DNA of 64,000 nucleotides from Camelus ferus (taxonomy: Eukaryota), in assembly GCF_009834535.1 (NCBI RefSeq), contig NC_045699.1:74710001-74774000 (forward strand), in the 5' to 3' direction. This document shows positions 8,801-11,800 of this stretch, in pieces. Under the pieces are notes generated by a model that worked only from the letters and a program-made list of their open reading frames with translations, had not been told where the DNA came from and made no database searches. The position numbers were made by a program, and so were the translations under genes. How positions within the stretch are numbered: position 1 is the stretch's first letter; every line of letters starts with the position of its first letter.

Positions 8801-11800
8801 CCATGAGCCGCCTCTGCCCTCAGATCCTCCTGGCCGGGCAGACGGGCCTGGGGGGTGTCATAGGCCTGGACGACCTCATCCTGTCGGCCGGCTGCAAACC
8901 AGTCCCAGGTGAGCCTTTTGACTGCCCTCTGTCCTCAGGAGAAGTACCCCCAAGCCCCTCCAACCCCTGTTCTGCCCCCACAGAGGTGTCTGGCCCACCT
9001 CCTGGGCTCTGGGCCCCAGGTCCCTGGCCCCAGCCGTCCAGCCTGCAGCTCTGGAATTTCTGCGAGCCAGGATATCTCTTTTGTGGGGACCTGTGTGTCC
9101 CCCCAGAGCAGCTGTGTGACTTCCAGCAGCAATGCCTTGGGGGCGAGGACGAGCAGGACTGTGGTAAGGGGCGGAACTGGCGTGGGGACAGGGGAAGCCC
9201 TGACCTCCCTTCCTCCAGACCCTCCCCGCTGCCAGCGGGGCGGGGGCCCAAGCCTGTTAGCACCAACGGCTGCTGTGTTGCAGGCACCACGGACTTCGAG
9301 TCCCCCATGGCCGGGGGCTGGGAGGACGCCAGCGTGGGGCGGCTGCAGTGGGCACGTCTCCCGGCCCAGGAGAGCAGGGTCCCTGGCACCGGTGCCGCCA
9401 GGGCTACTGCTGGTGAGGCCCAAGTCTCCTGCCCCAGGCAGCCCGGAGCCTGCCTTTGAACTGCACCCCCAGGGGGGTCCCCCATTCTGACTCCTCACTA
9501 GGGAAGTTCTCTGAGTTGGGGGTCCCCAGAAGGAATCAGCCCTGAGCGGCTCTGTCTTCCCCAGGACACTTCCTGTCCTTGCAGATGGCCTGGGGGCAGC
9601 TGGGAGCGGAGGCACGGGTCCTCACACCCACCCTGGGCCCCTCCGGCCCCCGCTGTGAACTCCACTTGGCTTACTATTTTCAGAGTCACCCCCAAGGTAC
9701 CGCTGTCTCTCCTGGCCCTCTGCCTAGCCCTGGGGCGGGTGAGGGCGGGTGAGGGCGGGCGGCCCACCCACAGTGACCCCTCACCAGGCTTCCTGGAGCT
9801 GGTCGTGGTGGAGGGCAGCAGCCGCGAGCTGGTGTGGCAGGCCCCGGGCAGCGGCACCGGCGGCTGGAAGGTGGACAAGGTCCTGCTTGGGGCTCGTCGC
9901 CGGCCCTTCAGGGTGAGGAGGGCAGCCTGGGTGGGGGGGCACACAGAGGCAGTCCTGACATAACAGCCCCGATCCCTTGTGCCCCTCCACGAAGCTGGAG
10001 TTTGTAGGGCTGGTGGACTTGGACAGCCCTGGCCAGCAGGGCGCCGCAGTGGACGACGTGACCTTGACAGGCTGCAGTCCCACGGCGGCCACCGAGAAAG
10101 ACACAGGTCATTCCCTCTGCGCCCAGTCCCCCTCCCTTTTGAGGGATCCCGCCTCAGAGCCCCCACTCCAGGAGCAAGTCTCTCCCACCCTCTCGGGAAT
10201 CAGGAGGGGCCCGGAGGTGGGGCGGGGCATGCTGACCCTGCTGCCCCACCCCCAGAGGTCTCCTGTAACTTTGAACGGGACACGTGCGCCTGGTACACAG
10301 GCCACTTCACCGACGCCCACTGGCGCCGGGTTGAGAGCTGTGGCCCTAGGTACGACCACACCACAGGCCAAGGTAAGATGGGGTACCCAGACTTGGGGGA
10401 CAGCTCTCCCAACTCAGAGGGCACCCCCAGACTCAGGCGCAGAGGGCTCACTCACACTGGGCCAAGCCTCTCTGCAGCTCCTCCCACGTCCCTTCTGCAG
10501 GGTACTTCATGCTCCTAGACCCCATAGACCCTCCAGCCCAGGGCCCCGCTGCCCACCTCCTCACCCAGCCCCAGGTGCCTGCAGCCACCCAGGAGTGTGT
10601 TTCTTTCTGGTACCACCTCTACGGGCCCCAGATCGGTGAGAGCCTGAGCTGGGCGGGGCCTCGGTGGAGGCCCGTGGGGGTCCCGAGTTCTGCCTCTTGA
10701 CTGCTCAGGAGCTCTGGAGGGGTGAGAAGCAACCAGGAGTTGGGGTCTGGTCCCCTCCAAACACCCTTCCCTCTAGGGACACTGCGCCTGGCGATGAGGC
10801 GAGAAGGGGAGGCAGAATTGCACCTGTGGTCACGGTCCGGCACCCACGGCAACCGCTGGCACGAGGCCTGGGTCACCCTCCACCACCTGCAGGATTCCGG
10901 CATCAAATACCAAGTGAGGCCCGGTGCCAGGCGGGGGTGGACAGGCCGAGGCCCCAGCTGGCTGACCCCCTCCACCCCCACCCAGCTGCTGTTCGAGGGC
11001 CTCCGGGACGGGTACCACGGCACCATGGCACTGGACGACGTGGCTGTGCGGCCTGGGCCCTGCTGGGCCCCCAGGCACTGCTCCTTCGAGGACTCGGCCT
11101 GTGGCTTCTCCACGGGGGGCTGGGGCCTCTGGATTCGCCAGACCAATGCCACGGGCCCTACCGCCTGTGGCCCCCGTGTTGACCACACCACAGAGACACC
11201 TCAGGGTGCTGGCAGGGGTGGGGTGGTGAGGAGGTGGGCAGAGGGGTGGGAGGAGGGGCAGGGATGGCCGGCTGACCCTGGCACCCCCCCAGGGACACTA
11301 CATGGTGGTGGACATGAGCCCGCAGGCACTGCCCCGTGGCCGCATGGCCTCCCTGACCTCAGAGGAGCACAGACCCCTGGCCCGGCCAGCCTGCCTGACC
11401 TTCTGGTACCACCTGAGCCTCAGTAACCCAGGTAAGGGGCTACTGGGAGCAGGGCCACAGGGTCCCCACAGGTCCCTGTGCCAAGGCCACTTGGGAGCCC
11501 ACAAGGCAGGGCCCTGAGCGGCCAGTCTCCCCCACCACCTCTGACCTGGTCTGGCTGCTCGGGTGCCAGGCACCCTACAGGTCTACGTGGACGCAGCTGG
11601 AAGGAGTCAGGTGCTCCACATCAGCAGTCATGGAGGGTTTGCCTGGCGTCTGGGCAGCGTGGATGTGCGGGCCGAGCAGGCCTGGAGGGTGAGAGTGGTG
11701 GGGGTCTTCCTCACCCCAGGGCTGTCCAGTCCAGACCAAGTGTGAGCCAGCCCTGCCCTGTGCCTGCCCAGGTGGTGTTTGAGGCCGTGGCCGCCGGCGT

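What the first reader, a model, noticed from the sequence alone, without database searches (positions are those of the whole stretch)
11202..11431. MAMDC4 exon 20/21: one-base phase conflict with a possible compensating donor shift
Seen: the orthologous donor CAG G|GTGCTG (11205/11206) is phase 1 and weak. The only AG acceptor (11291-92) opens GGA CAC TAC ATG in phase 0. Joining them shifts the frame and hits TAA at 11424-11426, giving ~900 aa without the TM helix or tail, which is an NMD substrate. A consensus donor GTG|GTGAGG at 11225/11226 is phase 0 and restores the frame, adding 7 residues ([13 protein letters not shown]) and leaving a 67-nt intron with a CTGAC branch site at ~11272-11276. 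All 27 other junctions are clean. Inference: this is (a) splice-site sliding that rescues an insertion, (b) a recent loss-of-function allele, or (c) an assembly error in GGG.
Basis: partly seen in the sequence, partly recalled or inferred. Interest (0 to 1): 0.75.

Follow-up and report, generated by a model that had tools for sequence, protein, structure and literature searches.

The report
Probable false frameshift in camel MAMDC4
The one-base frame conflict in the wild Bactrian camel's MAMDC4 gene comes from a single extra A found only in this long-read assembly, so it is most likely an assembly error, not a gene loss or a splice-site rescue.

Summary
MAMDC4 (5816-13834, + strand) has 29 coding exons and 28 GT-AG introns. 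There is one defect: joining donor 11205/11206 to acceptor 11292/11293 shifts the frame and stops at TAA 11424-11426, after 909 aa. Donor 11225/11226 (GTG|GTGAGG) would restore the frame with seven extra residues.

The cause is one inserted A at 11295, the third base of exon 21. The window is 100% identical to the Camelus ferus assembly GCA_009834535.1, built from PacBio Sequel reads. Domestic Bactrian camel, two dromedary assemblies, alpaca, pilot whale, hippo, rhino and takin all read CAG|GG-CAC without that A. Their genes are intact.

The "rescuing" donor is identical in all five camelid assemblies, four of which have nothing to rescue. It is therefore an older cryptic site, not a compensation.

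The RefSeq C. ferus protein reads PQGDYM. That is only possible with an 88-nt CT..AC intron (11209-11296), which suggests its evidence was one base shorter than the genome. No C. ferus sequencing run holds all the sampled words of the locus (0.99 or 0.97). Deleting the A predicts 0.987.

My odds are about 0.8 assembly error, 0.13 a real private loss-of-function allele, and 0.05 rescue by the cryptic donor. The single read-laying run was lost to a filter, so no reads were inspected.

The parts
5816..13834 (+). MAMDC4 (apical endosomal glycoprotein / endotubin) coding region, ATG to TAG, 29 coding exons
   Evidence: Spliced alignment to P0011 finds 28 GT-AG introns and 77% identity. ATG and TAG were checked. 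Pfam MAM hits. The product differs from RefSeq C. ferus XP_032334805.1 by one residue and one gap over 1216 aa.
10986..11205 (+). Exon 20, the end of one MAM domain and start of the next, ending ...DHTTETPQ + G (phase 1)
11206..11292 (+). Orthologous intron 20: 87 nt, GT-AG, phase 1, with no in-frame stop
   Evidence: The same 87-nt intron is found in C. bactrianus, dromedary and alpaca. Alignments.
11203..11211 (+). Canonical donor AGG|GTGCTG, weak but conserved in all mammals compared
   Evidence: 5 of 9 consensus matches and 3.3 bits, tied weakest of 28 donors. Conserved in whale, hippo, rhino and takin.
11223..11231 (+). Cryptic downstream donor GTG|GTGAGG, 20 nt into the intron
   Evidence: 8.35 bits on the gene's own PWM. 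Identical in all five camelid assemblies. Reads GTGGGG in hippo and GTGGGC in takin.
11272..11276 (+). CTGAC branch-site-like motif, with its A 17 nt upstream of the acceptor AG
   Evidence: Read directly from the sequence. GCTGAC is invariant in alignment A1.
11295..11295 (+). The extra A (GGG-A-CAC), third base of exon 21 and sole cause of the frame conflict; probably an assembly insertion error
   Evidence: Absent from L005, L007, L008, L009 and from L001-L004. It is one of only two differences private to this assembly in 9 kb.
11293..11431 (+). Exon 21, MAM domain core [11 protein letters not shown]...
   Evidence: Pfam MAM positions 43-82
11424..11426 (+). TAA reached if donor 11205 is joined to 11293 as the sequence is written
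11209..11296 (+). 88-nt CT..AC 'intron' implied by RefSeq XP_032334805.1 (PQGDYM); an annotation work-around
   Evidence: It is the only junction that yields PQGDYMVVD. It is also the only 88-nt junction with a canonical motif on either strand.

Best explanation
The A at 11295 is most likely a residual single-base insertion error in the consensus of the PacBio Sequel (CLR) assembly of Camelus ferus, GCA_009834535.1.

The real gene most likely reads CAG G|gt...ag|GG CAC TAC, as in every other camelid and mammal examined. It would splice at the conserved weak donor 11205 and encode an ordinary full-length MAMDC4 with ...[12 protein letters not shown]....

The downstream GTGAGG is a pre-existing cryptic site. 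It lies 20 nt from the true donor, so with one spurious base it happens to look like a rescue.

Shown: the insertion is private to this assembly; the cryptic donor predates it; the gene is intact in relatives; the assembly technology.

Inferred: that the A is absent from the animal's DNA.
For: (1) The window is 100% identical to GCA_009834535.1 CM020771.1. That assembly is listed as Pacific Biosciences Sequel, 130x (PMC9374477).

(2) C. bactrianus GCA_048773025.1, dromedary GCA_000803125.3 and GCA_036321535.1, and alpaca GCA_048564905.1 all read CCCCCCCAGGG-CACTAC. Pilot whale, hippo, white rhino and takin also lack the A.

(3) Over 9 kb the window has only two private differences from the other four camelid assemblies: one intronic substitution (11750) and this insertion. 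A real private indel landing in coding sequence is a priori rare.

(4) MAMDC4 is intact in the three other camelid species, with 28 GT-AG introns, no frameshift and no stop.

(5) RefSeq C. ferus XP_032334805.1 reads PQGDYM. That needs the 88-nt CT..AC junction 11209-11296, the only canonical-motif junction removing 88 rather than 87 nt. A splice-aware aligner would produce this from transcripts one base shorter than the genome. A protein alignment would have better options, such as GG..AG or GT..GG giving a perfect GHYM.

(6) No organism-B run reaches 1.00 of sampled 31-mers: seven sit at 0.99 and two at 0.97. Removing the A predicts 0.987. Removing the A and reverting 11750 predicts 0.974.

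(7) Scan notes list 92 'frameshift' notes in this genome. Many are +1 shifts in conserved genes. One follow-up judged a frameshift in OR51E2 to be an assembly error. These are unchecked leads.
Against: No raw reads or contigs were laid on the site.

The inserted A is not a homopolymer extension, which is the commonest residual long-read error.

The 0.99 shares cannot be assigned to this site rather than to 11750.

A rare heterozygous allele in the sequenced animal would give the same cross-assembly pattern.

The origin of the RefSeq CT..AC junction is inferred, not documented.
Confidence: 0.8

Rival explanations
1. The A is a real, recent frameshift allele of MAMDC4 in the wild Bactrian camel, private to the sequenced animal or segregating in the species. 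Transcripts spliced at the usual donor 11205 are truncated at 909 aa, lack the TM helix and tail, and are degraded by NMD. This would be a loss-of-function allele.
For: The base is in the deposited assembly. The insertion is not next to an identical base, so it is not the typical homopolymer error. The canonical donor is the one used in all listed RefSeq camel isoforms, so an A-bearing allele would mostly be out of frame. The stop lies in exon 21 of 29.
Against: It is absent from the sister species, which diverged about 0.43 Mya (PMC9374477), and from all other assemblies. The rest of the gene is flawless. The RefSeq model for this very assembly implies evidence one base shorter. No C. ferus run holds all the words. 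Real loss-of-function indels per gene per individual are far rarer than residual CLR indel errors; this last point rests on established knowledge, not on a test here.
Confidence: 0.13
2. The A is real, and the allele is partly or wholly rescued because the stronger cryptic donor at 11225/11226 is used. That gives a 67-nt intron and a full-length protein with GAGRGGV inserted before GHYM.
For: 20 nt + 1 nt = 21 nt, and the frame then stays open for 1233 codons. GTG|GTGAGG scores 8.35 bits against 3.3 for the canonical donor on the gene's own PWM. The branch-site motif is 49 nt from that donor.
Against: The donor is identical in camelids without the insertion, so it did not evolve as compensation. 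In C. bactrianus, with the same intron, every listed isoform uses the canonical donor. NCBI's C. ferus model did not use 11225 although it is a clean GT-AG option. Among the long orthologues held, 137 of 142 matches have exactly five residues between DHT and G-x-YM, and none has twelve. A 67-nt intron is near the lower limit for mammals (established knowledge).
Confidence: 0.05

Closest known systems
Residual single-base indel errors in PacBio CLR or other long-read assemblies that create false frameshifts in gene models
   Same: A one-base insertion is private to a CLR assembly, in a GC-rich (about 67%) compact gene that is otherwise intact. It is absent from better or independent assemblies of close relatives. 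The annotation pipeline had to work around it.
   Different: It was not verified with reads here, and the inserted base is not in a homopolymer run.
Annotation work-arounds for frameshifts: non-consensus splice sites, or 'LOW QUALITY PROTEIN' corrections in RefSeq
   Same: XP_032334805.1 keeps the frame by means of an 88-nt CT..AC intron, at the cost of H to D.
   Different: The listed name carries no LOW QUALITY flag. I inferred the junction from the protein and have not seen the record.
Cryptic 5' splice-site activation that restores the frame after an indel (splice-site sliding)
   Same: A stronger GTGAGG donor lies 20 nt downstream, which is exactly the distance that would absorb a +1 insertion.
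   Different: The site predates the supposed insertion and is present in species with nothing to rescue. No junction evidence exists, and the insertion itself is doubtful.
MAMDC4 / endotubin orthologues of other mammals
   Same: The 29-exon layout and the MAM and LDLa domains match. The phase-1 intron splits the Gly codon before [HY]YM, as at 10372/10501 in the preceding MAM domain. Identity to cetartiodactyl proteins is 82-85% over their longest local alignments.
   Different: Only the extra A at 11295.

Membership tests
MAMDC4 (apical endosomal glycoprotein) orthologue | Repeated MAM domains with an LDL-receptor class A domain, a C-terminal TM helix and a short tail | tested here: met
   Pfam MAM hits on exons 20 and 21. 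Full-length spliced alignment to P0011. TM helix at about residue 1170 of the in-frame model. Orthologues carry PF00629 and PF00057.
MAMDC4 (apical endosomal glycoprotein) orthologue | Near-identity to annotated camelid MAMDC4 at the same locus | tested here: met
   L006, the locus of XP_032334805.1, is 100% identical to the window. Identity is 99.8% to the C. bactrianus locus and 99.1% to dromedary.
Assembly consensus (indel) error | The base is absent from independent assemblies of the same or sister species | tested here: met
   Absent from four camelid assemblies and four other mammals. No second C. ferus assembly was available.
Assembly consensus (indel) error | The base is absent from raw reads of the assembled individual | not testable with these tools
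Indirectly, no organism-B run holds all sampled words (0.99 or 0.97), against 0.987 predicted without the A.
Assembly consensus (indel) error | The assembly was made with an indel-prone technology | tested here: met
   Listed as Pacific Biosciences Sequel, 130x (PMC9374477). A PacBio + Pilon dromedary assembly reports QV 36.6 (PMC13603154), cited only as an illustration.
Compensatory splice-site shift rescuing a frameshift | The new or strengthened splice site arose together with or after the indel | tested here: not met
   GTG|GTGAGG and the 20 nt before it are identical in C. bactrianus, both dromedaries and alpaca, which lack the insertion.
Compensatory splice-site shift rescuing a frameshift | The alternative junction restores the reading frame | tested here: met
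   The frame is open for 1233 codons with donor 11225.
Compensatory splice-site shift rescuing a frameshift | Junction reads show the alternative site in use | not testable with these tools
   Read laying was lost. Indirectly, all listed C. bactrianus isoforms and the C. ferus RefSeq model avoid it.
Unitary pseudogene or lineage-specific gene loss | The lesion is shared by relatives, or there are several lesions or signs of relaxed constraint | tested here: not met
   There is a single lesion. The gene is intact in three other camelid species. Only one other private change occurs in 9 kb, and it is intronic.

The most novel reading that the evidence does not exclude
The extra A is a genuine allele in wild Bactrian camels. 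An ancient cryptic donor, present in all camelids and stronger than the true one, happens to lie exactly 20 nt downstream. It would then rescue a +1 frameshift at once, yielding a MAMDC4 with a seven-residue loop insertion. That would be a natural case of a pre-existing splice site buffering a frameshift without any second mutation.
Probability: 0.05. Interest if true: 0.45.

Novelty: not a real feature. Interest (0 to 1): 0.1.

Why it matters
If the A is an artefact, as I judge most likely, the value is practical.

MAMDC4 should not be counted as lost or remodelled in the wild camel. The RefSeq model for this assembly carries a spurious H-to-D change from a CT..AC junction. This assembly also appears to hold false +1 frameshifts, so every such call in it needs read support before any biological reading.

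MAMDC4/endotubin is tied to the neonatal intestinal endocytic apparatus (abstracts of PMC5756061 and PMC5112496). A loss confined to one camel species would have been surprising.

If the A is real, it would be a loss-of-function allele in a critically endangered species. It would also be a small natural test of cryptic-donor rescue.

Tried and rejected
- **Read laying.** I called it on window 9500-13000 with three RNA runs and one DNA run. No junction or genomic read evidence was obtained.
- **Genomic ORF search.** Searching the ORF 10722-11423 for camel-derived fragments found nothing above 75% identity. Camel Logan contigs are apparently not in that protein collection.
- **Exact look-ups that failed.** P0252, P0152 and P0296 were not on record.
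- **First tblastn chaining.** It ran through the short GC-rich introns and mixed paralogous MAM repeats. I replaced it with my own spliced dynamic-programming aligner.
- **G-to-A at 11229 as compensation.** I considered that this change, which makes GTGAGG, was a camel-specific compensation for the insertion. I rejected that once the other camelid loci showed the same donor without the insertion.
- **Origin of the RefSeq PQGDYM.** I considered a one-base 'correction'. No single-base deletion gives D. Only the 11208^11297 junction does.
- **dN/dS on exons 21-29.** I dropped this test. The lesion is private to one assembly with one other private change in 9 kb, so there is no signal to measure.
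- **Literature.** I found no mention of MAMDC4 among inactivated camel genes (PMC12127551).

Full report
**What is there**

The window carries MAMDC4 (apical endosomal glycoprotein, endotubin) on the + strand, from ATG 5816 to TAG 13832-34.

A protein-to-genome spliced alignment that I wrote for this purpose used the full-length colugo orthologue P0011, found. It gives 29 coding exons, 28 GT-AG introns and no in-frame stop. It finds exactly one frameshift, at 11205. Exon 20 is 10986-11205 and exon 21 is 11293-11431. Both exons hit Pfam MAM.

- weak phase-1 donor CAG G|GTGCTG at 11205/11206
- acceptor AG at 11291-92
- exon 21 opening GGA CAC TAC ATG
- GTG|GTGAGG at 11225/11226
- CTGAC at 11272-76
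- TAA at 11424-26

Joining 11205 to 11293 stops the protein after 909 aa, ahead of the TM helix near residue 1170. Joining 11225 to 11293 keeps 1233 codons open with GAGRGGV inserted.

On a PWM built from the gene's other 27 donors, the canonical site scores 3.3 bits, tied for weakest of 28. The downstream site scores 8.35 bits.

**Where the extra base is**

The preceding MAM domain shows the normal arrangement: CAA G|gt...ag|GG TAC TTC ATG.

Aligning the exon 20 to exon 21 stretch with pilot whale, hippo, white rhino and takin loci shows that all four read ...CCCCCCAG|GG CAC TAC ATG. The window reads ...CCCCCCCAG|GGA CAC TAC ATG. The frame conflict is therefore one inserted A at 11295, the third base of exon 21.

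**Whose genome, and who shares the A**

A third protein search brought up camelid proteins. Their cluster holds RefSeq models from C. bactrianus, C. dromedarius, C. ferus and Vicugna pacos.

The locus of the C. ferus model XP_032334805.1 is in GCA_009834535.1, CM020771.1. It is 100% identical to the window over 8695 bases. The window is therefore the chromosome-level wild Bactrian camel assembly. A review lists that assembly as Pacific Biosciences Sequel at 130x (PMC9374477).

I fetched the same locus from four other assemblies:
- C. bactrianus GCA_048773025.1
- dromedary GCA_000803125.3
- dromedary GCA_036321535.1
- alpaca GCA_048564905.1

All four read CCCCCCCAGGG-CACTAC, without the A. Around that site the three Camelus sequences match the window exactly, and alpaca differs by a few substitutions.

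In a five-way alignment of about 9 kb, the window has just two private differences. One is an intronic G at 11750 and the other is this insertion. The C. bactrianus assembly has ten private substitutions.

MAMDC4 is intact in the other three species, with 28 GT-AG introns, no frameshift, no stop, and the same 87-nt phase-1 intron 20.

**The "compensating" donor**

GTG|GTGAGG and the 20 bases before it are identical in all five camelid assemblies, including alpaca. Hippo has GTGGGG and takin GTGGGC.

The site is therefore a camelid-wide cryptic donor that existed before any insertion. It cannot have evolved to compensate for it. The in-frame arithmetic (20 + 1 = 21) is a coincidence.

All listed C. 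bactrianus RefSeq isoforms, the newer dromedary model and the alpaca model read PQGHYM, the canonical junction. Protein lists cannot, however, show unproductive isoforms.

Among the long orthologues I hold, 137 of 142 matches have exactly five residues between DHT and G-x-YM, and none has twelve.

**What the existing annotation did**

The C. ferus RefSeq protein reads PQGDYM, with D where every other species has H.

A brute-force search over all exon-end and exon-start pairs shows only one junction gives that peptide. Exon 20 ends at 11208 and exon 21 starts at 11297. The intron is 88 nt and reads CT..AC.

That is also the only junction removing 88 nt rather than 87 nt that has a canonical motif on either strand, since CT..AC is GT..AG on the opposite strand.

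A protein aligner had better options, GG..AG or GT..GG, which give a perfect GHYM. My inference is that the junction came from transcript alignments one base shorter than the genome, that is, from mRNA without the A. This is inference; I could not see the record.

A GenBank dromedary model (KAB1279648.1, P0293) instead retains the whole 87-nt intron, which is open and in frame.

**k-mer shares**

The run search reported the share of 251 sampled 31-mers of 10300-12700 held by each run.

| Runs | Observed share |
|---|---|
| Organism B, seven runs | 0.99 |
| Organism B, two runs | 0.97 |
| Organism A | 0.92-0.96 |
| Organism C | 0.95 |

No organism-B run reaches 1.00, although several are flagged as possible sources of the assembly.

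| Sequence | Share computed from sequences in hand |
|---|---|
| Window itself | 1.000 |
| Window without the A | 0.987 |
| Window without the A and with 11750 reverted | 0.974 |
| C. bactrianus assembly | 0.948 |
| Dromedary | 0.895 |

The observed values fit a world in which no wild-camel run contains the A-bearing words. The shares cannot be assigned to this site rather than to 11750, so this is supportive only.

**Context from the scan (unchecked leads)**

92 notes on this genome mention frameshifts. Many are +1 shifts in conserved genes such as SLC4A2, KRT13, OTOG, IL2RB and CD19. One follow-up concluded that a frameshift in OR51E2 is an assembly error. I did not test these.

**Weighing**

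A private, real indel in coding sequence is improbable on a haplotype that shows one private substitution in 9 kb. It would also sit in a gene intact in all relatives and tied to neonatal intestinal endocytosis (abstracts).

A residual insertion in a GC-rich stretch of a CLR assembly is common. An illustrative PacBio + Pilon camel assembly reports QV 36.6 (PMC13603154).

My odds:
- about 0.8 assembly error
- 0.13 real private loss-of-function allele
- 0.05 real allele rescued through 11225

**What is missing**

The decisive test is reads across 11285-11300 plus junction reads, and it could not be run.

The inserted A is not a homopolymer extension. A rare heterozygous allele in the assembled animal would look the same across assemblies. 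The error verdict is therefore probable, not proven.

Noticed in passing
window 11209-11296: RefSeq C. ferus XP_032334805.1 (P0312) reads PQGDYM. That can only come from an 88-nt CT..AC junction (exon end 11208, exon start 11297). It looks like an annotation work-around that puts a spurious H-to-D change into the public protein.
   Followed up: yes
window 11206-11292; L005 5867-5953: Intron 20 is 87 nt, a multiple of three, with no stop. Without the extra A its retention is in frame. The GenBank dromedary model KAB1279648.1 (P0293) retains it as a 29-residue insertion, and several ORF fragments from other mammals (e.g. P0028) read through it too.
   Followed up: partly
window 11223-11231 and the same site in L005, L007, L008, L009: All camelids keep a cryptic donor GTG|GTGAGG 20 nt downstream of a much weaker true donor. 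In normal animals its use would add 20 nt and break the frame. Whether it makes an unproductive isoform is untested.
   Followed up: partly
window 11750: This is the only other difference private to this assembly in 9 kb: G where the other four camelid assemblies have A, inside intron 22. Two organism-B runs at 0.97 may lack it.
   Followed up: partly
window 9733-9742 and 10142-10155: A 10-nt insertion in intron 14 is shared by the two two-humped camel assemblies. A 13-nt deletion in intron 16 is specific to both dromedary assemblies. Both are intronic.
   Followed up: no
window 22788-22923: A run of 136 N (assembly gap or masked stretch).
   Followed up: no
window 10242-10283: read laying refuses any stretch that includes these places because of a filter. 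Anyone repeating the read test must choose a stretch beside them.
   Followed up: no
orthologue set P0011, P0151-P0314: The loop between DHT and G-x-YM of this MAM domain has exactly five residues in 137 of 142 matches among long orthologues. The exceptions look like intron-retention models.
   Followed up: partly
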